Assembly: GCF_016433145.1 (NCBI RefSeq)
Contig: NC_058130.1
Coordinates: forward strand, 92,097,002 to 92,161,001
Direction of reading: 5' to 3'
DNA length: 64,000 nt
Source: Gracilinanus agilis
Taxonomy: Eukaryota
Part shown: piece after piece, positions 1 through 64,000 of the stretch
How the letters are laid out: every line of letters begins with the position of its first letter
Numbering within the stretch: the first letter of the stretch is position 1
Program-made: the position numbers and the translations under genes
Notes under the pieces: generated by a model
What the model was told of the DNA's origin: nothing
The model's input: only the letters and a program-made list of their open reading frames with translations
Database searches by the model: none

Positions 1-600
1 GAGAGTGGGTTGCCAAGGGGCCCAGAGAGCCGAGTGCAGGGCTGGCGGCGGCGGCGGCCTCGGTGAGTGAGGGAGTGAGGGAGGCCCTGCCGCCCGGGGC
101 GGGGTAGTCGGGGCCGCCCGCGGCGTTTAGCCGCGCAGCCCTTCCGCCCGCCCGCCCGCTCCCGCTCGGCCCAAGGTCACGGGGAGCCGGCCCTGGGCTG
201 GGAGGCTGGGAGGCTGGGAGGCTGGGAGGCCGAGAGGCCGGGAGCCCAGTCTCCCAGCTGGGGGGGGCGGGGCCGGCCCCTCCTCCGAGGTCCCCGCCCC
301 TTCAGCGGCTCTACGCCGGAGGAGGGTAGGAAAGCCGGGCGTCCAGAAGCGAAGGAGGAGGGGATGGCAGATTGACGGCGAAGAGACTCTTCGCATTTGG
401 TAGGCGAAGTCAGGGCCCAGAAAGGCTTCCAGCTGGAGAGCCGAGGTCCGCTCGTCGCGTGCGTGGGCCCGCCCGGGCCTGCGAGGCCCTTAGTAACAAT
501 CACTAAAACACACCTAGAGGACCCCGGGGGAGTAGAGTGGCCGGACTGACCTCCGTTCTGAGATCCCCTGAAGGGAGGGGTGCGGGAATAAGGTGCTAGG
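1..600 (+). promoter_or_regulatory. USP19: USP19 CpG island with non-coding exon 1 (ends at 62, donor GTGAGT at 63)
   Basis: Very GC- and CpG-rich segment with GC boxes and a strong 5' splice donor. The next exon (4977-5236) carries the USP19 start codon. Confidence 0.75.
195..230 (+). repeat. (GGGAGGCT)n 8-bp tandem repeat, G-quadruplex-capable
   Basis: Four copies of ctgggagg, with GGG runs at 195, 200, 208, 216 and 224. Confidence 0.7.
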
Positions 601-5112: not shown

Positions 5113-28415
<23,303 letters not shown>

Positions 28416-28786
28416 GTTGCCTGCTTTGTAGGCTGGCCCTCTGGGGAGTGGATTTGGACCCCCATTGTGGACTTGGGGCCCTGGTTGTGTTCATTACATT
28501 TTGTCTCAGGGCTGCCTGCCAGCCTCCCCCCAAGGAGAGAATAGGCTTCTGCCCAGCCAATTCCTCATGTCTTAGACCCTGAGCTATGTCCCTGGACCAC
28601 CTGCCTGTTGGGCCCTACCTTTAGCCCAAGGCCATAAGCATAATCCTGAGGTTACAGGGATTCCATTCTCCCTTCTTGCCTTCCATCTCTGAGGCCCAAC
28701 CCCAGATCCTTCTTTCCCTTTCCATGATCCCAATTCCCAAGCTACTTAATTTAATGTATTAATTAATTTATTGTATTTAATGTGTC

Positions 28787-28792
28787 AATAAA
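28787..28792 (+). terminator. Polyadenylation signal for the USP19 TM isoform
   Basis: AATAAA about 370 nt after the stop at 28415, preceded by an AU-rich tract and followed by GT-rich sequence. Confidence 0.7.
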
Positions 28793-29039
28793 GTGAAATT
28801 GTTCCCAGGCTCAGTGTCTTGTCTCCTCCCTCTGGTGCCTCTTAGTGCGTCTTTTCCCCATGTGCGCCTACCATCCCAAAAAATGTTCTAGAGTACCTGG
28901 ACCAATCTATGTGCCCTGATTGCTCACTGGTGGTGGAGAAGGGGACCCACACCCTAGGGAGAGGATCCTGGGAGCTGTTGGAGGGGAAGGGATTGCCCCC
29001 CTCCATACTGCCCCTCCCAGCATTATGTTCCATTTGCAG

Positions 29040-29171
29040 GGAATGGGCCCCGAGCCCTTCACGCCTGGTCTGGACCCTGAGGGGGGCCCCCCGATGACGC
29101 CCGCAGAGCTGTTCCCCCGCCCCACGGAGCGTCCCACCCCTACCTACAGCAACATGGAGGAAGTCGACTAG
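29040..29171 (+). CDS. USP19: USP19 alternative terminal exon, cytosolic isoform ending in MEEVD
   Basis: Acceptor tttgcag at 29039, phase 0 like the donor at 26436. Translates GMGPEPFTPGLDPEGGPPMTPAELFPRPTERPTPTYSNMEEVD*, matching the known USP19 ...PTYSNMEEVD terminus. Confidence 0.93.
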   Translation, partial: GMGPEPFTPGLDPEGGPPMTPAELFPRPTERPTPTYSNMEEVD

Positions 29172-34399: not shown

Positions 34400-34980
34400 C
34401 CGACCACCTGGAACCTGGAGGGGTGGGGTGGGGTGGGGGCTCCCTAGGTGCTGACTTGGCCCAGTGCCCAGAGCCGCAGGGAACGCGGCCACGCGCGCAG
34501 GGAAGGAAGAGGCTGTCAGTGTAGCGAGGGGGCGGGGGCGCGCAAGTGCTGCGCTGTGCCGGGCTGCGCGCAGTGCAGCGCAGGCGGGGTGGGGAAGGGA
34601 ACCGGAGCAGAGTCGGGAGTGGAGGAGAGCGGGAGGCCGGAGCTGAGCCGGCAACATCGGAGATGGCGGAGCATCCGCAGCAGCCGTGGAGCCAGCCCAG
34701 AGGGAGGCAGGGCACCCCGGAGCCCTTAGCGGGTAGCGGCCGGGCCAGGCCGGGAGGACTGGCTTCGGCGGGAAGCTGAGCCTGAGGGCCCAGGTGAGAC
34801 CCCGGACTGGGGTTGGGGGAACTGCACCAGAGACAAGGAAAGGGACCCCATTCCCCTAGCAAGCCGCCCCCCAGATGCGAAGTCAGGTCTTGTTCCTTTG
34901 CGTAGCTGGCTTGCTGCGGACGGTCATCCCGCTAGAGAGGAGGAGTCTTTTCCTCCCCCTTCCCGGTCCCGCGTCAAAGG
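34400..34980 (+). promoter_or_regulatory. CpG-island promoter and non-coding first exon of the GPR22-like gene (donor CAG|GTGAGA at 34793/34794)
   Basis: Isolated CpG island with GC boxes and a strong donor. The nearest downstream strong acceptor (long pyrimidine tract, CAG at 37808-37810) lies 30 nt before the GPCR ATG. Confidence 0.7.
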
Positions 34981-37840
34981 CCTCCCTTCCCCAACCTAGG
35001 AATTCAGTGCCATCTATTAGGGGTATTTGTGTGCAATTGTATGCTGTGACCAAAGGGTGAAGAAAAAATGTGCCCACAGCTGGGAAGGTGTAATGGTGTC
35101 TGGGTACCCACTCAAAGATTCTGATCCTTAGGAGACAAACTGATTCCTCAGATCACCCCACCCGCAATCACAAGGTTGGGCTCTTATCGGTGCCTTTCCT
35201 CAACCTTTCATCACTGGAGGCTTTTGGTAGAGGAAAGGAAAGGGAGCCCTTTGCCTGAGCCCCAGCTATCCAGCCACCAGTGTAATAAGCAGCCTGAATC
35301 TGACGCTCTCCCAGAGAACTCTGCCACAAAGATTGGCCCCATTGGGCATTAGGGACTCCATTCCAGGGGACAAATCAGGTCAGAGGATCCTATGATCATC
35401 TATCATAAAGTGAAGAGACTTTACCCATCATCTAGTTCAACCCTCTGATTATAAATGAGGAACTAGACTAGAGAAGAGCTGGAACTCGCCAAGGTCAGAT
35501 AGGTAGTAAGTTGCACATGATTCAAATTTAGGTTCTGTTATTCTAAATCAAGTGATTTTTCCTTTTGCTTTGGCATTGTAGAAGTATGAGAGGACTAAAG
35601 AGACTAAAGAAGGGAGAGACAGAGCACCCTACTTGGATAGACCTCTTTGTCAGAGATCAGGATATATAAACAAATGAAAAGCAACTCATTAATGTGATAT
35701 GGGCTTAAGGGAGAAAGGATAAAAGGTGTATCTGGAAAATTAGAGAAAGTTTCCTTGTCCGAGGTGGGCTGAGCTGGAGTTAAAATGAGGGGTGAATCCC
35801 CCTTCCAGCTTGACTGGAGTGGGGAGAGCTTTTGCCCAACACAAACAAAGAAGGCTGATCTTGGGAGAAGACCTCTGTTAGATACAGTTCAATGGAATGG
35901 AAACATCCCTCGGATCCTGAGCTGGGAGTCAAGGAGATAGGTTCTTGGCGAGACTCTTTGAGATTAACTTTCTGTGTGCAAGTCTCTTCCTCTCTTTGGA
36001 TCTGTTTTCCGACTGGGCCATAAGGGGGTTGGAGGAAATGAACCCTGAGGTTCTTTTCAGCTCTGAATTCATGTCCCTAGAGGTGGTGCTGGTGTCAGCT
36101 ACTTCCCAAAGGAGCCCCTCTGGGGATAAGGGTAAAGATGGCTACTGGAAACTGTGTCTCTTTTTGGTTGTTTACAAACACCCAGCCTGGCCTAGAGCCT
36201 CCTGAGGAACAAATCTTCTTCTGACCTTGGCCACGAACCAAGGGCATCTCCTCCTCAGCAGTGCCAGAGCAGAAATCTACACATACTCCCTCTCAGTCCT
36301 GCAGGAGATACTGAGAGCTGCTTGTCTCCTCCAGGACAGGTCTGCCTGCATTCCTCCCCACCCAGAGACCCCAGAATATAAAGAAGGGACAGATGACCTG
36401 AGGTGTGGCTCTGGATGTGGGTGGGTCAGGAGCTCTGACCTTTATTCCCAGCCTTTCTCTTCCCTCACTCCTCTCACCCCCAACTGACCATTTTGTGGGT
36501 GGGGAGGGAGAGGACAAAGTCAAAATAACTTCTCCAGTTACCCTTGGTTAGCTGACATCATGGTAGGGGGGTTGGTGGGATGGAGGTGGAGTCACTTAGT
36601 CATCTTGCCAGATGGGGCAACAGCTGCTGCATGTTCCCCAATTCTGATGCTTGGTTCCTTCACTGGAATCATCATATACTAAAGCTGGAAGGGACCTTAG
36701 AACATAGGATGAAAGAGCTAGGAAAGCCTTTTTAAGATCATCTATTCCACCCCTTTTACAGATGGGGAGACTGAGACCCAGGGAAGTTAAATAATTCAGG
36801 TTCAAACAAGTAGTTAATGACAAAGCTGGGATTCAAATTTAGCTGTTCTTAGGCCAACCAATTCCAAGATTCCAAAACAGCACACTGTCCTATAACCCAT
36901 CCCTTTCTCCCTAGAGCAAAAGTGGGCTTCAGATGCATCTGGGTCTGTGGGAGAAGGGGGCAGGGGACACTTAAAGCTAGGTGTTACTCAGGGTCTGGAG
37001 CCAAAGGCAAGGAAGTCAGACACTTATTCCAGAGCAGGAGGCAGGCTATTTCAGGAAGGATAGAGACTAGGTTGTGGAGACTTTGTTTCTCTTTTGGAGA
37101 GCTTCCATTTTGAGGGAGGGCAGAAGACAGTGGTAATAATTCCCATTTCTACAGAGCCTTAATGTTTACACTGCACTTTCCTCCCGACACCTTTGTGAGG
37201 TGATGAAAATATTGTCATCTCCATTTTACAGATATGCTCAGAGACTGTGATTTGACCTGGGGCTCCTGACTCTCACTCCCTGTGCTGCTGCTTCCCTACT
37301 AAAAGTTCCGACTCATAGAATCAGATGAAAGAAGGCTGGATGAGGGGAATAGAAATTCATCTCAGACTTCCTGGAGGAAATTGGAGGGAGGGGAGATGTT
37401 CTAAAAACAATCTAGTCCAGCTCATTTATTAAGCACCTTTGCTTCTTTGCCCAGGGCACTGTGCTAGAGTCATAAAGATAATGGATCGAAGAGCCAAGCA
37501 CTGAATACTAGTTGCCAATTCCAAATGCTCCTGCCTTTGCAATACATAACTCCCATCTAAATTGTACTTTGAGATTTACAAGCACTTACTTTCTTTACCA
37601 TAGCCTTGCAACACATAAAACCTCATGAGGTTCATTCAACAAGGGTATTTGACTTGCCCAGAGTAGCTTAGCACAATGCCTGGCACGTAGTAGAGGTTTA
37701 AATGTTTATTGATTATAGAGCTTGTCTCTTAGTGCCAGGGTTAGGAGGATGGGGAGCCGGAGAAATTCACCGCCTTCTCTCTCTTGCCCTCCTCCCTCCC
37801 TCCCTTCCAGGTGGCTCTGGGATTATGCTGAGCCCCGCCC

Positions 37841-39208
37841 ATGGAGACCCACGTGGACCTTCCGGTGCTGGAGACACATGATGGACCAGGGGCAGGGGCT
37901 ACAGTGGGCAGCCCTGAGGATGCTGGCTGGGCTGGGGGACCGTTCCCTGGGGGCTTCCGGGCTTCCCTGGCGGGCGTGCTGCTTCTGGAGCTGGCACTGG
38001 GTCTGGGCTGCAACGCTGCTGCCCTGCTACTGCACCGGGCCCGAGCCGGCCCCCGGGCCTCCGCCAGCGCTCGCCTCACCCTCAGCCTTCACGTGCTGGA
38101 CACGCTCATCTGCGCGCTTTGTGTCCCGCTCAGTGTAGCCGTACTCCTGCTGCCCACGACGGCGCCTCGCGTTCCGGCCTCGGCGCGCCCCGCAAATCTG
38201 CTCTGCCGGTTCCATGAGGCCGGAGTCACCTTCAGCGGAGTGGCCACAGCCGCTGGCGTCCTCGCTGTGAGTCTGGACCGCTATGACATGTCTGCGCGGC
38301 CCGCGCGCCGCCGTCTCACACCAGCGCGCGCGCTGTTGCTCCTGGCCGTCGCTTGGCTCCTCTCCCTGGCAGCCTTTTTCTTGCCCTTTGTGGAGGCCGG
38401 GTTCGCCCCGGGGGCGTGGGATGAGGCCTCGGGTGCTGACAACCGTACAGGCGTGTCCTGTGTAGGTACAGGAGGAGGTTGGGGCGTGGCGGGCCGAGGG
38501 GCGCCTGCTGGCAGGGGCCACCTGTTGGTGCAGATCCCTGCCTTCGTGGCTGCTCTCGTGGGGCTGCTGGTGACCTACGCGCGTGTCCTCCATGCACTGA
38601 GCGCGGGCCTCGGTGCAAGAGCTAGTCGGCGGCGGAGAAGGGGGAAGCGGCGAGGGCACAGCTGTGGCTCTGGGGCCGGGGCTGGAGAGGCCCGGGGACT
38701 GAGTCCGATGCCGCCGCGGGCCGCGCCTGCCCCGGGTCCCGCGCCCCCACCGCCAGCCCTGCAAACTTCAGTGTCTGTAATTCTCGCGCTGCGCAGAGCG
38801 GTGCGCAGGCACCGCGACCGGCGGGCTCGGAGGCGTCGGGTTTTGCGCCGGTCGCTGCTCATCGTCAGTTCTTTTGTGGGATGCTGGGCTCCGCTGTCTG
38901 TGGGCAATCTGCTTCTTTTGTGCATGGGCCCCAGCGAGCGGCTGGCCCGCCTGCGACTCTGCTGCCTGGCGGCTGCCTACGGTACCACGGTGCTGCACCC
39001 GCTCCTCTACGCCTTCCCTCGCCGCACGCTGAGTCGGGCACTCCGAAACCAAGCCCGGAGGCACACCGTGTGCGCCTTGCGACCCGAACCACCTGCCCCA
39101 GCTGCTGCTATTGTGCGGAATTCCTGGCTAGGAATGCGCAAGGGCTCCGGGGAGGCGGAGGAAGCCGGGGACCGTGGTTTGGGCTTGGGAGAGCAACCGC
39201 CCGACTGA
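37841..39208 (+). CDS. GPR22-like orphan class A GPCR (paralogue of GPR22), 455 aa, intronless CDS
   Basis: Seven hydrophobic segments with class A landmarks: GCN (TM1), LHVLD (TM2), C-RFHEA and SLDRYD (TM3), W in TM4, ECL2 Cys, HLLVQIP...TY (TM5), CWAP (TM6), AYGTTVLHPLLYAF (TM7). It also has the GPR22-specific blocks TSVSVILALRRAVRRHRDRR, LCMGPS, LRLCCL and IVRNSW. Good Kozak context (cccATGG) and no stops or frameshifts. Confidence 0.92.
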   Translation: METHVDLPVLETHDGPGAGATVGSPEDAGWAGGPFPGGFRASLAGVLLLELALGLGCNAAALLLHRARAGPRASASARLTLSLHVLDTLICALCVPLSVAVLLLPTTAPRVPASARPANLLCRFHEAGVTFSGVATAAGVLAVSLDRYDMSARPARRRLTPARALLLLAVAWLLSLAAFFLPFVEAGFAPGAWDEASGADNRTGVSCVGTGGGWGVAGRGAPAGRGHLLVQIPAFVAALVGLLVTYARVLHALSAGLGARASRRRRRGKRRGHSCGSGAGAGEARGLSPMPPRAAPAPGPAPPPPALQTSVSVILALRRAVRRHRDRRARRRRVLRRSLLIVSSFVGCWAPLSVGNLLLLCMGPSERLARLRLCCLAAAYGTTVLHPLLYAFPRRTLSRALRNQARRHTVCALRPEPPAPAAAIVRNSWLGMRKGSGEAEEAGDRGLGLGEQPPD

Positions 39209-40360: not shown

Positions 40361-40366
40361 AATAAA
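40361..40366 (+). terminator. Candidate polyadenylation signal of the GPR22-like gene
   Basis: AATAAA about 1.15 kb after the stop, followed by U/GU-rich sequence. Confidence 0.5.
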
Positions 40367-42372
40367 CTTGTTTGCCATTCTGCCCTCAAAAGTTCTGGCC
40401 TCTCTCTGGGTCCCTGCATAGGGGTTGGAAGATATAGAGACAACCAGTTCCTTTTACTTGTGGGGAAAAAAAAACAAGGACTCACTCATCATACTGTCTG
40501 AGAAGCTGACTAGTTTTGAAAATGATTTGCATATGTCAACAGAAACCTAAGCATCCTTCCTCCCAACAGTTTCCTTCACTCTCAGTCAATGCTGCTCTTG
40601 TCTCAATTCCCTCCCTGACCAAACTGTTCTCAAGGACTTCCTGGTCAGGACTGAATTTTTGGGTTCTGGACCCTTCTTGCCACTAGATCTCAAACTGTTC
40701 CAGGAGAGAGTCTGGACAGCAGGTTGTTCGGAAGAGGGACCTGGATGGGTTGGCAGAAGTAGATCTAGGGAATAAAGCAGGTTTAGTTAATTAGGGAGGC
40801 ATCCCAGAAGCAGAGAAAGCATAAGCTAGACAGCCATTTGTAGGTCCTGAAACTGTACCCTACCTTGTCTCCTAGATCAGCTTTCTGTTAGAATGGAAGA
40901 AAGCAGATTTTTTATCCAAATAGAGTATAAGAGATAAAGATTGATAGCTAGAAAGGTTCTTATGGACCATCTATCTCAGCTCCTCGGTTAGATGAAGAAC
41001 CTGGGACCCCTGAAATATGACATGTCCAAGGTCACAGGGGCCTAAGTAGCAGAACTGAGTTGAACCCAGTATACCATGCTGCTGAGTTAAAAAGACTCAG
41101 ATCACTTCGGGAGAGAAGTAGAAGAGGAGGACAAAAGATAGCTAAAATACTCCAGGAAGACCTAGTGAAGGAGGGAAAGAAGGGAATTTGGGATTGAAAA
41201 GAGAAGTTGCCCCTGCCCAACAAAATTATCCCATGGTATAATTTAGTTCATAAGAATGAATCTTGAATCCCATCAGCTTTAGTGTCTCTTCCTTTGTTCA
41301 TCTCTAGAAGAGGTGGGTAGTATCACCATACCTAGAGGTAGGGTGGAGGAAAATAAAGGAGGGAATGAAAGAGGAAAAAGAAAGGAGAGGACTGAAAAGG
41401 TTGGAAAGAGAGAGGAAAGGAGGGAAGAAATCTGTTCAGAATCATTTCACTTCAACATCAGGAACAATTTCCCAACAGCTGTACAACAAGGAAAAGGCTG
41501 GCTCAGAAGATAGTACCTTATCCTGCAGGTATTTAAGCAGAGGATACAGGATCCCCTGTCAGGGTACTTTAGATGGGATTCCTGGACCGGTGGGGAGGTT
41601 GGAGTCTGATCTTTAAGACCCCTTCCATCTCAGACTCTAGTAGGCGACACAAGATGTCACATAGGTGCACCCTTGTGGCTTCATCAGGAATTGCTTTCGG
41701 GCTGATGGATTTCTGCAGAAGGGGGAATCACTGAGAACCTCAACCTGCTAGATCCCTCTGTTCTTAGGAAGCTAAATCTTGCCTGAAGCCTGCTAAAAAT
41801 TTGCTGGCCTCAAGGCCCCACCCAATTATAGAGGGGCAATATTGGGGAAATTAGATATGGGAAATAGCTGGGGCTAGAAGGCTTCCCATCACCCCCCAGG
41901 GCTCAAGGAAACACTTTATAGACATCCTGATAATAGGTACTATGTCTTGAGGGCACATGACCAAGTATTTTATTTTGTTTTTTTATATCCTTGAAATTTT
42001 TATTTAATTCATTAATTAATTTAGGATATTTTTCCATGGTTACAAGATTCATGTTCTTTCCCTCCCCTCCTGCCACCCCCTGCCCATCACTGATCTAAAG
42101 AAATGAATGCAGATACACAGGGAATTCAATGACCTATAAAAGACAAGGACATAAAAGAGAAGCAAGGGAAGATAATGGAAGATAAGCAACAAGCACTGCA
42201 ATATCAGAAGTGATATAAATTGGAACAAGCAAAGAACAATAAGAACAATAAAAAGGATAGACTTTTTGTTATATTGTTTTTTTAAAGCAACAAAGTATAC
42301 TTTTGAGAATCTTCTCTTGCTTTTATTGTTTGTTCGACTGCACCAAGATAATGGATTCTGGCAAAACCAGTA

Positions 42373-42907: not shown

Positions 42908-44123
42908 ATTTGTTTGTTTGTTTGTTTGTTTGTTTGTTTGTTTGTTTGTTTTTGGTTTTTTAATTATTTTTTTATTTTTTAGAAAAATTTTCCATGGTTA
43001 CATGATTCATGTCCTTACTTTCCCCTTCACCCCCTTCCCCATAGCTGACATGCATTTCCACTGGTTTTAACATGTGTCATCAATCAAGACCTATTTCCAT
43101 ATTATTGATAGGTGCATTGGTGTGGTCGTTTCAAGTCTATATCCCCAATCATGTCTGCATCAACCCATGTGTTCAAGCAGTTGTTTTTCTTCTGTGTTTC
43201 CACTCCTGTAGTTCTTCCATAAATCCCTCAGAATTGTCCTGGGTCATTGCATTGCTGCTAGTACAGAAGTCCATTACATTTGATTTTACCACAGCGTATC
43301 AGTCTCTGTGTACAATGTTCTTCTGGCTCTGCTCCTTTCACTCTGCATCAATTCCTGGAGGTCTTTCCAGTTCATATGGAATTCCTCCAGTTTATTATTC
43401 CTTTGAGCACAGTAGTATTCCATCACCAACAGATACCACAATTTGTTCAGCCATTCCCCAACTGAAGGACATACCCTCATTTTCCAATTTTTTGCTACCA
43501 CAAAAATAAATGCACATAAATCATCAGCATTTCTATATATTTCCAACACATCACAGCAGCAAGAATTAGAAAGAGAAACCCCATTAAAAATCACCCTAGA
43601 CAATATAAAATACTTAGGAATCTATCTACCAAAACAAACACAGGAATTATACAAATACAACTATAAAACACTTTCCAAACAATTAAAACTAGATCTAAAC
43701 AGGGCAGCTGGGTAGCTTAGTGGATCAAGAGCCAGGCCTAGAGATGGGAGGTCCTACGTTCAAACCTGGCCTCAGACACTTCCCAGCTGTGTGACCCTGG
43801 GCAAGTCACTGGACCCCCATTGCCCACCCTTACCACTCTTCCACCTAGGAGCCAATACACAGAAGTTAAGGGTTTAAAAAAAAAACAACTAGATCTAAAC
43901 AACTGGAAAAGCATTGATTGCTCATGGTTAGAACAAGCTAACATAATAAAAATGACCATTCTACCCAAATTAATTTACTTATTTAGTGCCATACCTATCA
44001 AACTACCAAAATACTTTTTTACTGAATTAGAAAAAACTATAACAAAGTTCATTTGGAAGAACAAAAGATCAAGAATATCAAGGGAAATAATGAAAAAAAA
44101 AAAACAGGAAGGAAGGTGGCCTA
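42908..44123. mobile_element. L1 insertion with inverted 5' part (3' end on - strand 42908-43515; ORF2 segment on + strand 43516-44123)
   Basis: Minus strand: L1 ORF2 C-terminus (VVAKNWK...WLNKLWY...MQSE) plus 3' UTR and (CAAA)n tail. Plus strand: HKSSAFLY...IKYLGIYL...NWKSIDCSW...[17 protein letters not shown]. Confidence 0.85.
43702..43886 (+). mobile_element. Young opossum SINE inserted into L1
   Basis: Perfect 15-bp TSD aactagatctaaaca at 43687-43701 and 43887-43901. Confidence 0.9.
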
Positions 44124-44804
44124 CGTGATAACTGGATTAAGTCTATACTGCCCATCTTTAGATCTAATCACCAAAGGTGAGAGCACCTCCAAATTCTGGG
44201 AGGTCCTTAACCCACGTGTGCTAGAGTGAGTGATGAATCAGAATCAACTGACTGCCCCCTAGGCAATCCTATGAGAAGCATCTATTGTGATTGGACACAC
44301 AAACTAGGGGAAGGCACAGGAAGTGATGCATAAGTGACCCCTTTAAAACGAGGGAGTTGACTGAATGAGAGGACTTCTGTTGAAGAGGGCTAATGGTGAA
44401 GGAGGTCTTCTAGTTTTCCTGGTTCGTAGAGGAGTGTTAGCTGGAATGCTGAGACTTTGGTGAGACTACCTTCAATATCTTCTTTAGAAGTCCACATGGT
44501 GAATTTAAAGACTGAATCTTCCTGAACTTCTCTTAAGGAACTTCCCTTTAATAGCCTCTGGCCCTCTCACTCTTGGCTGAGGGTTAATTAGATCTACCTA
44601 GATTAATTAGAGGTTCATAGTAATTTACCTACTATGTTAGATTCTTATTTCCTTATTTCCTCTCTCTCTTCTCAATTGTAAATAAACTTCCATAAAAGTC
44701 AATTTTGATTTGAGATTATTCTTAATTGAGGATTGATAATTGTTCCATCCTCTGGTGACCAATCTTAAATATATTTACCCCAAAGCCCCCTTTTCCCCCT
44801 TACA
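44124..44804 (+). mobile_element. LTR (same family as 48497-49211), no matching TSD
   Basis: Starts (c)gtgata and ends ccccttaca; shares blocks aatcaccaaaggtga, tgtgattggaca and ggaagtgatgcataag with the second LTR. Confidence 0.8.

Positions 44805-51525: not shown

Positions 51526-64000
<12,475 letters not shown>

What the first reader, a model, noticed from the sequence alone, without database searches (positions are those of the whole stretch)
37841..39208. Intact GPR22 paralogue between USP19 and QARS1: candidate ohnologue kept in marsupials and lost in placentals
Seen: a complete 455-aa 7TM ORF with GPR22-diagnostic motifs (LDRYD.S.RPA, HLLVQIP, TSVSVILALRRAV.RHR.RR, AYGTT.LHPLLYAF, I.RNSW), its own CpG-island first exon, a splice acceptor and a polyA signal. 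It therefore looks like a functional gene rather than a retrocopy. Recalled knowledge: human GPR22 lies at 7q22 inside COG5 near LAMB1/LAMB4, while USP19-QARS1 lie at 3p21.31 beside LAMB2, only a few kb apart with no coding gene between. 3p21 and 7q are paralogous blocks (LAMB1/2, GNAI1/2, SEMA3, CACNA2D1/2). Inference: this is the whole-genome-duplication sister of GPR22, a second orphan receptor that eutherians lost and that is probably uncharacterised.
Basis: partly seen in the sequence, partly recalled or inferred. Interest (0 to 1): 0.85.

Follow-up and report, generated by a model that had tools for sequence, protein, structure and literature searches.

The report
Marsupial GPR22-like receptor gene (GPR22L)
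This is an intact, selectively maintained second copy of the orphan receptor GPR22, lying between USP19 and QARS1 in marsupials; it belongs to an ancient vertebrate paralogue (GPR22L) that placental mammals lack, but the clade was named in 2019 and is already annotated, so it is real and correct rather than new.

Summary
The 455-aa ORF at 37841-39208 (+) is real. It is a class-A GPCR with every microswitch intact and a confident 7TM model, and its nearest characterised relatives are GPR22 (35-37% identity). It lies between USP19 and QARS1 on the same strand; USP19 ends 8-9 kb upstream of the same single-exon gene in Monodelphis, wombat and sugar glider. It is not a relocated GPR22. The canonical clade (shark to eutherians, including Tasmanian devil and both monotremes) has 100/100 support and excludes it (AU p = 3e-18). 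The devil's canonical GPR22 is still nested in COG5. The window protein groups with 'GPR22-like' proteins of platypus, turtles, skate, lamprey, gar and teleosts, and many species carry both types, so the duplication predates jawed vertebrates. No eutherian, bird, squamate or amphibian member appeared in the hit list. Selection is evident: 2.4% of TM columns vary among four marsupials against 23% of loop columns, and dN/dS versus platypus is at most 0.25. Two caveats apply. The clade was already named GPR22L (Rinne et al. 2019) and NCBI annotates it. The USP19-X-QARS1 position could be confirmed only in marsupials: platypus, turtle and stickleback copies have other neighbours within 10 kb. WGD origin is therefore consistent with the data but unproven.

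The parts
37841..39208 (+). Single-exon CDS of the GPR22-like receptor (GPR22L), 455 aa plus stop codon
   Evidence: ORF; Pfam 7tm_1; 97% identical to Monodelphis 'GPR22-like' over its full length; 7TM + helix 8 AF2 model; top Swiss-Prot fold hits are GPR22.
37770..37810 (+). Candidate 3' splice acceptor: polypyrimidine tract ending ...cccttccAG at 37809-37810, 30 nt upstream of the ATG
   Evidence: Read directly from the sequence; no transcript evidence.
37825..37881 (+). Out-of-frame upstream ATG opening an 18-codon uORF that overlaps the main start codon; an in-frame TGA at 37829-37831 bounds the main ORF
   Evidence: Sequence and stop-to-stop ORF table.
34470..34793 (+). CpG-rich block with a consensus 5' splice donor (CAG|GTGAGA at 34793|34794): candidate non-coding first exon and promoter, unverified
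   Evidence: GC 0.68 and CpG o/e 0.63 for 34501-35000, donor-like site; sequence; long ORFs here have no Pfam hit.
40361..40366 (+). First AATAAA downstream of the stop codon, implying a 3'UTR of about 1.15 kb; a second AATAAA lies at 40771
   Evidence: Pattern scan; sequence.
5113..29168 (+). USP19 coding exons (upstream neighbour); the last coding exon ends ...PTYSNMEEVD, 8.7 kb before the receptor ATG
   Evidence: Exon peptides; Pfam USP19_linker + UCH on window exons; the same arrangement in Petaurus, with USP19_linker, UCH, zf-MYND and CS, and in wombat and Monodelphis.
51526..64000 (+). QARS1 coding exons (downstream neighbour), running off the window; the ATG is about 12.3 kb after the receptor stop codon
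   Evidence: N-terminal peptide [25 protein letters not shown]; Pfam tRNA_synt_1c_R1 and tRNA-synt_1c on window exons.

Best explanation
The ORF is the marsupial orthologue of GPR22L, an ancient vertebrate paralogue of the orphan class-A receptor GPR22. Shown here: it is an intact 7TM receptor gene with a single coding exon. It is kept at the same place (USP19 -> GPR22L -> QARS1, all on one strand) in American and Australian marsupials. It is under purifying selection concentrated on the transmembrane core. It is phylogenetically separate from the canonical, COG5-nested GPR22, which marsupials also possess. Both lineages include cartilaginous fishes, ray-finned fishes and tetrapods, while invertebrate deuterostome homologues fall outside both. 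The duplication therefore dates to early vertebrate evolution, which is compatible with the 1R/2R genome duplications. Eutherians lack it (as apparently do birds, squamates and amphibians, none of which appeared in the hit list). Inferred: it works like GPR22. That means a plasma-membrane (possibly ciliary) receptor with an unknown or no ligand, signalling through Gi/o to lower cAMP, perhaps constitutively. The basis is that it keeps the family's DRY, CWxP and HPLLY switches and the highly basic TM6-proximal ICL3 segment (ALRRAVRRHRDRR...) that is invariant between the two paralogues. Also inferred: transcription starts at a CpG-island non-coding exon about 3 kb upstream, splices into the acceptor at 37810, and ends near the AATAAA at 40361. 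The marsupial lineage underwent a burst of change on its stem (branch 0.86 substitutions per site, GC-rich recoding, rewritten ICL1, a 9-residue ECL1 insert), after which the protein was tightly conserved.
For: ORF and Pfam 7tm_1. Nearest named proteins are 'GPR22-like' of seven marsupials (83-97% identity), platypus (56%), turtles, gar, teleosts, skate and lamprey. Careful ML tree: canonical clade 100/100, including Sarcophilus, platypus, echidna, eutherians, sauropsids, amphibians, coelacanth, lungfish, shark and ray-fins; window + Monodelphis 100/99; marsupial L 100/100; plus platypus L 100/99; plus turtles, skate and lamprey 100/100. AU test rejects marsupial L inside the canonical clade (dlnL 92, p 3e-18). 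L monophyly is not rejected (p 0.073). Sarcophilus canonical GPR22 exists and is nested in COG5. USP19 lies upstream on the same strand in Petaurus, wombat and Monodelphis. All microswitches are conserved. The AF2 model shows 7TM + H8 with TM pLDDT 83-95. The top four Swiss-Prot fold hits are GPR22 at E 1e-20 to 1e-22, with the next class at 1e-10. Variable columns among four marsupials: TM 5/207 against non-TM 57/248; a neutral ORF would survive with P = 0.005 at 0.2 substitutions per site. NG86 against platypus gives dN 0.31, dS 1.2 (saturated), omega <= 0.25. Published naming of GPR22L, with no human orthologue (PMC6504862). GPR22 couples constitutively to Gi/o (Adams 2008 as cited in PMC11138089).
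Against: There is no expression or transcript evidence, so the first exon, promoter and tissue are unknown. No marsupial-to-marsupial dN/dS could be computed because DNA of the other marsupial loci was unavailable. In the ML tree the canonical stem attaches to the gar/Amia L-type (100/100), so L-type monophyly is not recovered. This is probably a rate and composition artefact, since marsupial, skate and lamprey sequences fail the composition test. Immediate neighbours differ outside marsupials: platypus has a Pkinase gene downstream, the Mauremys turtle has a beta/gamma-crystallin gene downstream and satellite upstream, and stickleback has a CIDE-N gene upstream. No USP19 or QARS1 exons lie within 10 kb in any of them. 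Gi/o coupling is extrapolated from a paralogue only 37% identical. The marsupial ICL1 and mid-ICL3 are strongly diverged.
Confidence: 0.85

Rival explanations
1. The gene is an ancient paralogue, but its place between USP19 and QARS1 is derived. It moved there in the marsupial or therian stem, for example by retroposition of its single-exon mRNA or by a small rearrangement. In that case the resemblance to the 3p21/7q22 paralogon is coincidental and says nothing about WGD origin.
For: Platypus, turtle and stickleback copies have other neighbours and no USP19/QARS1 exons within 10 kb. The turtle copy sits 1.4 Mb from the end of a 130-Mb chromosome amid satellite. The long marsupial stem branch (0.86) and the GC-rich recoding would fit a change of genomic environment. 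The coding sequence is intronless.
Against: The CDS is single-exon in the turtle and marsupial L copies and in the canonical gene, so intronlessness is not diagnostic. An upstream acceptor and a candidate 5' exon are unusual for a simple retrocopy. From recalled human map data, GPR22 lies between PRKAR2B and LAMB1, and USP19/QARS1 lie beside LAMB2 near PRKAR2A and SLC26A6. A random landing in exactly the paralogous segment is very improbable. The 10-kb views are too short to exclude regional synteny, since the window's own gaps are 8.7 and 12.3 kb.
Confidence: 0.25
2. 'GPR22L' is really two ancient paralogues, one kept by tetrapods, skate and lamprey and one kept by ray-finned fishes, with reciprocal loss. 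The vertebrate GPR22 family would then have had at least three early members.
For: The ML tree separates a tetrapod + skate + lamprey L clade (100/100) from ray-fin L lineages and joins the canonical stem to gar/Amia L (100/100). [quoted passage not shown] Neighbours differ between fish and tetrapod copies.
Against: No species in 93 hits carries two non-teleost-duplication L copies. L monophyly is not rejected (dlnL 4.9, p-AU 0.073). Skate and lamprey nest inside tetrapods, which is not the species tree. The sequences involved also fail the composition test and have long branches, which points to artefact.
Confidence: 0.12
3. The gene is the GPR22 orthologue itself, relocated from COG5 to the USP19-QARS1 interval in marsupials.
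For: None beyond family resemblance (35-37% identity to GPR22).
Against: The canonical clade at 100/100 excludes it. The AU test rejects the grouping (p 3e-18). Sarcophilus has a canonical GPR22 at least 90% identical to other amniotes and nested in COG5. Platypus has both types on different chromosomes.
Confidence: 0.01
4. The ORF is a decaying or non-functional copy (pseudogene or retrocopy) that is open by chance in a GC-rich, stop-poor sequence.
For: GC 0.69 lowers the stop-codon frequency, and several long spurious ORFs overlap it on both strands. There is no expression evidence.
Against: Full-length ORFs occur in the window species plus seven other marsupials spanning the American and Australian lineages. 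Substitutions avoid the TM core by tenfold. All microswitches are retained. A simulated neutral ORF survives with P = 0.005 at 0.2 substitutions per site, without counting indels. Omega is at most 0.25 against platypus.
Confidence: 0.02

Closest known systems
GPR22L ('G-protein coupled receptor 22-like'), the GPR22 subtype without a human orthologue named by Rinne et al., Sci Rep 2019 (PMC6504862); NCBI LOC models in Monodelphis, Vombatus, Phascolarctos, Petaurus, Sminthopsis, Notamacropus and Macrotis
   Same: It is the same gene. It is 97% identical over the full length to the Monodelphis model and 83-92% to Australian marsupials. It groups with platypus, turtle, gar, teleost, skate and lamprey 'GPR22-like' proteins. 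The taxon distribution matches the published set (gar, duplicated fishes, coelacanth, amphibian, reptile, marsupial).
   Different: Nothing essential differs. This window adds a further didelphid-like species. This analysis adds the USP19-QARS1 position across marsupials, formal exclusion from canonical GPR22, evidence of selection, and the marsupial-stem burst of change. I did not verify that the paper's reference ID ENSLOCP00000017943 equals the gar protein used here (P0013).
GPR22 (canonical; human Q99680): orphan class-A receptor of brain and heart, constitutively Gi/o-coupled, nested in a COG5 intron
   Same: It shares the fold and the family signatures: DRYD, HLLVQIP, CWxP, HPLLY in place of NPxxY, the basic ALRRAV(K/R)RHR(E/D)RR segment before TM6, the (I/V)xxNSW tail motif, a single coding exon, and a similar length (433 against 455 aa).
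   Different: Identity is only 35-40%. It forms a separate clade (100/100) and sits at a different locus. Canonical GPR22 is at least 90% identical across amniotes, whereas the L-type evolves much faster, with a marsupial stem branch of 0.86 substitutions per site. The marsupial L-type has a 9-residue ECL1 insert, a rewritten ICL1, a proline/alanine-rich ICL3 centre and GC-rich coding. Ligand, coupling and expression of the L-type have never been tested.
Other class-A receptors retained in marsupials, monotremes or sauropsids but lost in eutherians (e.g. GPR185/GPRx, PRLHR3, HRH5 and GPR190B in PMC6504862)
   Same: The evolutionary pattern is the same: an early-vertebrate paralogue, patchy retention, and loss on the eutherian stem.
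   Different: These are different receptor families. They are listed only to show that the pattern is common: the paper counts 19 such clades in marsupials.

Membership tests
Rhodopsin-like (class A) GPCR, Pfam PF00001 7tm_1 | Profile match above the curated threshold | tested here: met
   68.9 bits against a cutoff of 30.5, E 6e-19, residues 77-390.
Rhodopsin-like (class A) GPCR, Pfam PF00001 7tm_1 | Seven transmembrane helices plus helix 8 | tested here: met
   AF2 helices at 37-68, 75-103, 116-152, 161-188, 226-272, 305-362 and 366-390, plus H8 at 396-413. TM pLDDT is 83-95. PDB fold hits are all class-A receptors.
Rhodopsin-like (class A) GPCR, Pfam PF00001 7tm_1 | Conserved microswitches: N1.50, D2.50, TM3-ECL2 Cys pair, D/ERY, W4.50, P5.50, CWxP, NPxxY | tested here: met
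   N58, D87, C122/C207, D146-R147-Y148, W172, P233 and C348-W349-x-P351 are all present. TM7 has HPLLY (386-390) in place of NPxxY, as in every GPR22-family member aligned.
GPR22 family (GPR22 + GPR22L) | Closest characterised relatives are GPR22, well separated from other class-A receptors | tested here: met
   Swiss-Prot fold search: ranks 1-4 are GPR22 of rat, mouse, human and zebrafish, E 1e-20 to 1e-22, 35-37% identity; rank 5 has E 1.8e-10. All named sequence hits are GPR22 or GPR22-like.
GPR22 family (GPR22 + GPR22L) | Family-specific motifs (HLLxQIP in TM5, ALRRAVxRHRxRR before TM6, AYGTTxxHPLLYAF in TM7) | tested here: met
   Invariant or nearly invariant columns H227-L228-L229, Q231, P233, A316-R333, Y380, T383 and H386-F392 across 12 and 46 sequences.
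Canonical GPR22 orthogroup | Falls inside the clade holding human, mouse, bird, frog, shark and gar GPR22 | tested here: not met
   It is excluded by a 100/100 branch. Forcing it in costs 92 lnL units, p-AU 3e-18.
Canonical GPR22 orthogroup | Nested in an intron of COG5 | tested here: not met
   The window gene lies between USP19 and QARS1. The marsupial canonical copy (Sarcophilus) is the one inside COG5.
GPR22L clade (Rinne et al. 2019) | Groups with the non-canonical gar, fish, reptile and marsupial set, and has no human orthologue | tested here: met
   It groups with Monodelphis and other marsupials, platypus, turtles, skate and lamprey (100/100) and lies outside the canonical clade together with the gar and teleost L-types. 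No eutherian appears among 93 hits. Strict monophyly of all L-types is unresolved (p-AU 0.073).
2R/1R ohnologue pair (GPR22 and GPR22L) | Duplication node after the split from invertebrate deuterostomes and before the gnathostome radiation | tested here: met
   Shark is in the canonical clade and skate (and lamprey) in the L clade. Both clades hold ray-fins and tetrapods. Saccoglossus, Amphiura and other invertebrate homologues fall outside both (100/100).
2R/1R ohnologue pair (GPR22 and GPR22L) | The two genes lie in paralogous chromosome blocks sharing other ohnologue pairs | not testable with these tools
   There is only the marsupial adjacency to USP19/QARS1 and to COG5. The 3p21.31/7q22 paralogy (LAMB2/LAMB1, PRKAR2A/PRKAR2B, SLC26A6/SLC26A3-5) is recalled knowledge, not tested here.
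2R/1R ohnologue pair (GPR22 and GPR22L) | Position of GPR22L conserved in outgroup lineages | tested here: inconclusive
   It is conserved across marsupials. Within +-10 kb, platypus, turtle, stickleback, pipefish, zebrafish, gar and Notothenia show no USP19/QARS1 exons. Three of them show other genes: Pkinase, Crystall and CIDE-N. The flanks are too short to judge regional synteny.
Processed retrocopy / pseudogene | Disabled ORF or neutral substitution pattern | tested here: not met
   The ORF is intact in the window species plus seven other marsupials. Variable columns are TM 2.4% against loops 23%. Omega is at most 0.25.

The most novel reading that the evidence does not exclude
GPR22L is a true 2R ohnologue still sitting at its ancestral site beside LAMB2-USP19-QARS1 in marsupials. 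On the marsupial (or therian) stem it underwent an episodic burst: 0.86 substitutions per site, GC-biased recoding, a new ECL1 insert and a rewritten ICL1. It was then locked under strong constraint, while eutherians deleted it and collapsed the USP19-QARS1 interval. This would imply a lineage-specific change of ligand or coupling in a receptor family whose canonical member is at least 90% identical across amniotes. It would also offer a natural 'second GPR22' for de-orphanising the family.
Probability: 0.3. Interest if true: 0.45.

Novelty: already known. Interest (0 to 1): 0.25.

Why it matters
GPR22 is an unliganded, constitutively Gi/o-coupled receptor with reported roles in cardiac stress protection and in zebrafish cilia. 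A second family member that is absent from human and mouse, but intact and constrained in marsupials, monotremes, turtles and fishes, gives a comparative handle on ligand and coupling. It also adds one more example of eutherian-stem GPCR loss. Its existence and its absence from placentals are already in the literature and in genome annotation, so this window adds no new kind of gene. A relocated orthologue is formally rejected. The USP19-GPR22L-QARS1 arrangement holds across marsupials. The rate asymmetry between the two paralogues is striking. The neighbouring genes outside marsupials do not yet support the synteny argument.

Tried and rejected
1. The word-indexed search with the window protein and the exhaustive HMMER search of 50% representatives returned no named canonical tetrapod GPR22. 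I reached it only indirectly, through an unnamed fragment (P0097) and then gar P0353.
2. Synteny by 10-kb flanks. Platypus, turtle, gar, Notothenia, zebrafish, pipefish and stickleback loci gave no USP19/QARS1 exons by tblastn. blastn found no conserved non-coding blocks, only dispersed repeats and the CDS.
3. One walking step upstream in the turtle found only a GC-rich tandem-repeat tract miscalled as a 785-aa gene.
4. The platypus kinase neighbour could not be identified, because only a 52-aa first exon lies in the locus. None of the neighbour genes has a remnant in the window.
5. DNA for Monodelphis, wombat and Petaurus loci was unavailable ('file too large'). A marsupial-to-marsupial dN/dS and a test of upstream-exon conservation could therefore not be done.
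6. Rfam found no RNA family in the window. Long ORFs in the 34-kb CpG island and at 43-44 kb have no Pfam hit.
7. Earlier-findings look-ups returned nothing.
8. The relocated-orthologue, pseudogene and chance-ORF readings were considered and rejected; see the rival explanations.
Full report
**Observation**

The window holds a 455-codon ATG-initiated ORF at 37841-39208 on the + strand. An in-frame TGA at 37829-37831 bounds it, so the N-terminus is well defined. It matches Pfam 7tm_1 at 68.9 bits against a cutoff of 30.5. It has only distant sequence matches to solved receptors (dopamine D1, opioid; E about 1e-8).

- a polypyrimidine tract ending in AG at 37810;
- AATAAA at 40361, 1.15 kb past the stop codon;
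- a CpG-rich block at 34.5-35.0 kb carrying a consensus donor at 34793|34794.

No transcript data were available, so the exon structure remains an inference. An out-of-frame ATG at 37825 opens an 18-codon uORF across the start codon.

**Surroundings**

USP19 coding exons run on the + strand from about 5.1 kb to 29.17 kb. Window exons give Pfam USP19_linker + UCH, and the last exon ends ...PTYSNMEEVD. QARS1 begins at about 51.53 kb on the + strand, with the Gln-tRNA-synthetase N-terminal domain and the class-Ic catalytic domain. The receptor therefore sits in a 22-kb USP19-QARS1 interval, co-oriented with both neighbours. Nothing else protein-like or Rfam-like lies in the interval.

**What it is**

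The best database hits are 'G-protein coupled receptor 22-like' of:
- Monodelphis (97% identity, full length);
- six Australian marsupials (83-92%);
- platypus (56%);
- six turtles (about 50%);
- gar, Amia, many teleosts, a skate and two lampreys.

No eutherian, bird, squamate or amphibian appears among the 93 hits. Canonical GPR22 had to be reached indirectly. It forms a separate, very conserved lineage. One 90%-identity cluster of 509 members spans rodents, carnivores, bats, birds, a lizard and the Tasmanian devil.

A careful ML tree was built from 66 sequences under LG+C20 with five invertebrate outgroups. The main results were:
- The canonical clade has 100/100 support and a species-tree-like order from shark to eutherians, including Sarcophilus, platypus and echidna.
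- The window protein joins Monodelphis (100/99), then the other marsupials (100/100), then the platypus L-type (100/99), then turtles, skate and lamprey (100/100).
- Forcing the marsupial sequences into the canonical clade costs 92 log-likelihood units (p-AU 3e-18).

The devil's canonical GPR22 is nested in COG5 on the opposite strand. Platypus carries both types on different chromosomes. Gar, Amia, Scleropages, Anguilla, Danio, Oncorhynchus, Gadus and Trematomus also carry both.

Monophyly of all L-types is not recovered. The long canonical stem attaches next to the slowly evolving gar/Amia L-type. However, L monophyly is not rejected either (dlnL 4.9, p 0.073). The marsupial, skate and lamprey sequences fail the composition test, so I read this topology as an artefact rather than as evidence for two L paralogues.

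**Is it functional?**

- *Open reading frames.* All eight marsupial ORFs (the window plus seven species) are open.
- *Pattern of substitution.* Among four marsupials spanning both superorders, 5 of 207 transmembrane columns vary, against 57 of 248 loop and tail columns.
- *Neutral expectation.* A neutrally evolving copy of this GC-rich CDS would stay open with P = 0.06 at 0.1 substitutions per site and P = 0.005 at 0.2, ignoring indels.
- *dN/dS.* Nei-Gojobori against platypus gives dN 0.31 and dS 1.2 (saturated), so omega is at most 0.25, even across the fast marsupial stem.
- *Microswitches.* Every class-A microswitch is retained: N58, D87, C122/C207, DRY 146-148, W172, P233, CWAP 348-351, and the family's HPLLY at 386-390.
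- *Fold.* AlphaFold2 with the family alignment gives seven helices plus helix 8, with TM pLDDT 83-95. The N-terminus, ECL1 insert, ECL2, mid-ICL3 and C-tail are disordered.
- *Nearest characterised relatives.* The four best Swiss-Prot structural matches are GPR22 of rat, mouse, human and zebrafish (E 1e-20 to 1e-22, 35-37% identity). The next class is eleven orders of magnitude weaker. No GPR22 structure has been solved.

**Mechanism (inferred)**

GPR22 is an orphan receptor of brain and heart that couples constitutively to Gi/o and lowers cAMP (Adams et al. 2008, as cited in PMC11138089). The L-type keeps the G-protein-facing elements that are invariant between the paralogues: DRYD, the basic ALRRAVRRHRDRR segment leading into TM6, and HPLLY with helix 8.

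I therefore consider Gi/o-type signalling by an orphan, possibly constitutively active receptor the most likely mode of action, at about 50%. The marsupial-specific ECL1 insert, the rewritten ICL1 and the proline/alanine-rich ICL3 centre arose on a stem branch of 0.86 substitutions per site. They could mean altered ligand or partner specificity.

**Position and the ohnologue claim**

USP19 lies 8-9 kb upstream on the same strand of the single-exon gene in three other marsupials:
- Petaurus, where the upstream gene has USP19_linker, UCH, zf-MYND and CS domains (1381 aa);
- wombat, where it has a UCH domain;
- Monodelphis, where it is a 1395-aa gene.

The arrangement is therefore conserved across both American and Australian marsupials.

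Outside marsupials I could not confirm it:
- the platypus copy has a protein-kinase gene 9 kb downstream;
- the Mauremys copy has a beta/gamma-crystallin-domain gene 9.5 kb downstream and only satellite upstream, and lies 1.4 Mb from a chromosome end;
- the stickleback copy has a CIDE-N gene upstream;
- no locus has USP19/QARS1 exons or conserved non-coding blocks within 10 kb.

These views are short, and the window's own gaps are 8.7 and 12.3 kb, so regional synteny remains open. The timing of the duplication fits 1R/2R. From recalled human map data, GPR22 lies between PRKAR2B and LAMB1, while USP19/QARS1 lie beside LAMB2 near PRKAR2A and SLC26A6. That makes an ancestral ohnologue position the more likely reading. 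It is not demonstrated here.

**Comparison with what is known**

Rinne et al. (Sci Rep 2019; PMC6504862) already describe 'a new subtype GPR22L'. They report it in gar, duplicated fishes, coelacanth, amphibian, reptile and marsupial, with no human orthologue among 65 placental genomes. No other paper in the library uses the name. NCBI and UniProt annotate the gene as GPR22-like in all the marsupials listed. The gene is thus known but functionally unstudied.

**Verdict**

Three caveats apply:
- WGD origin is consistent with the data but unproven.
- Retention is much wider than marsupials.
- The finding is not new.

Interest is modest.

Noticed in passing
window 28035-28412 and 28920-29168 (+): USP19 carries both alternative C-terminal coding exons known from eutherians. 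One is a hydrophobic membrane-anchor exon (...[13 protein letters not shown]...). The other is a downstream exon ending ...PTYSNMEEVD. The ER-anchored/cytosolic isoform switch therefore appears conserved in this marsupial.
   Followed up: no
window 55473-55855: A run of 383 N lies inside a QARS1 intron (assembly gap or masked stretch).
   Followed up: no
window 43045-44125 (+): ORFs of 128-154 aa have LINE-like peptide content (e.g. ...[38 protein letters not shown]) but no Pfam hit at E<0.01. This is probably a degraded retrotransposon in the GPR22L-QARS1 spacer. Repeats shared with the platypus locus occur at about 5.4, 31.5, 32.1, 43.7, 50.0 and 55.2 kb.
   Followed up: partly
L003 11310-11624 and 12780-13094 (Atractosteus spatula): The C-terminal third of the gar GPR22L gene is present twice, 1.47 kb apart and with identical match statistics. 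This is either a tandem segmental duplication or an assembly artefact. It may explain why the gene model there does not translate to the deposited protein.
   Followed up: no
L007 10.8-18.7 kb (Mauremys mutica CM035639.1, about 1.40 Mb): A GC-rich, proline-rich tandem-repeat tract is open in several frames on both strands (ORFs up to 905 aa). It is annotated as a 785-aa gene with no Pfam hit. It is almost certainly subtelomeric satellite and not a gene.
   Followed up: partly
P0096 (401 aa, Logan assembly, contig 1916 bp): This is a divergent GPR22-family protein of unknown taxon. It is only about 48% identical to turtle and gar L-types, with an aberrant N-terminus. It could be an amphibian or squamate GPR22L or a further subtype.
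   Followed up: no
Tree; clusters: The rate asymmetry between the paralogues is extreme. Canonical GPR22 is at least 90% identical from lizards and birds to rodents and a marsupial, with terminal branches of about 0.01-0.02. The marsupial GPR22L stem alone measures 0.86 substitutions per site, and the ostariophysan and lamprey L branches exceed 1.
   Followed up: partly
window 1-500: A strong CpG island (GC 0.73, CpG o/e 0.75) lies at the very start of the window, about 4.6 kb upstream of the USP19 ATG. It is presumably the USP19 promoter or first non-coding exon, or possibly the 3' end of the preceding gene.
   Followed up: no
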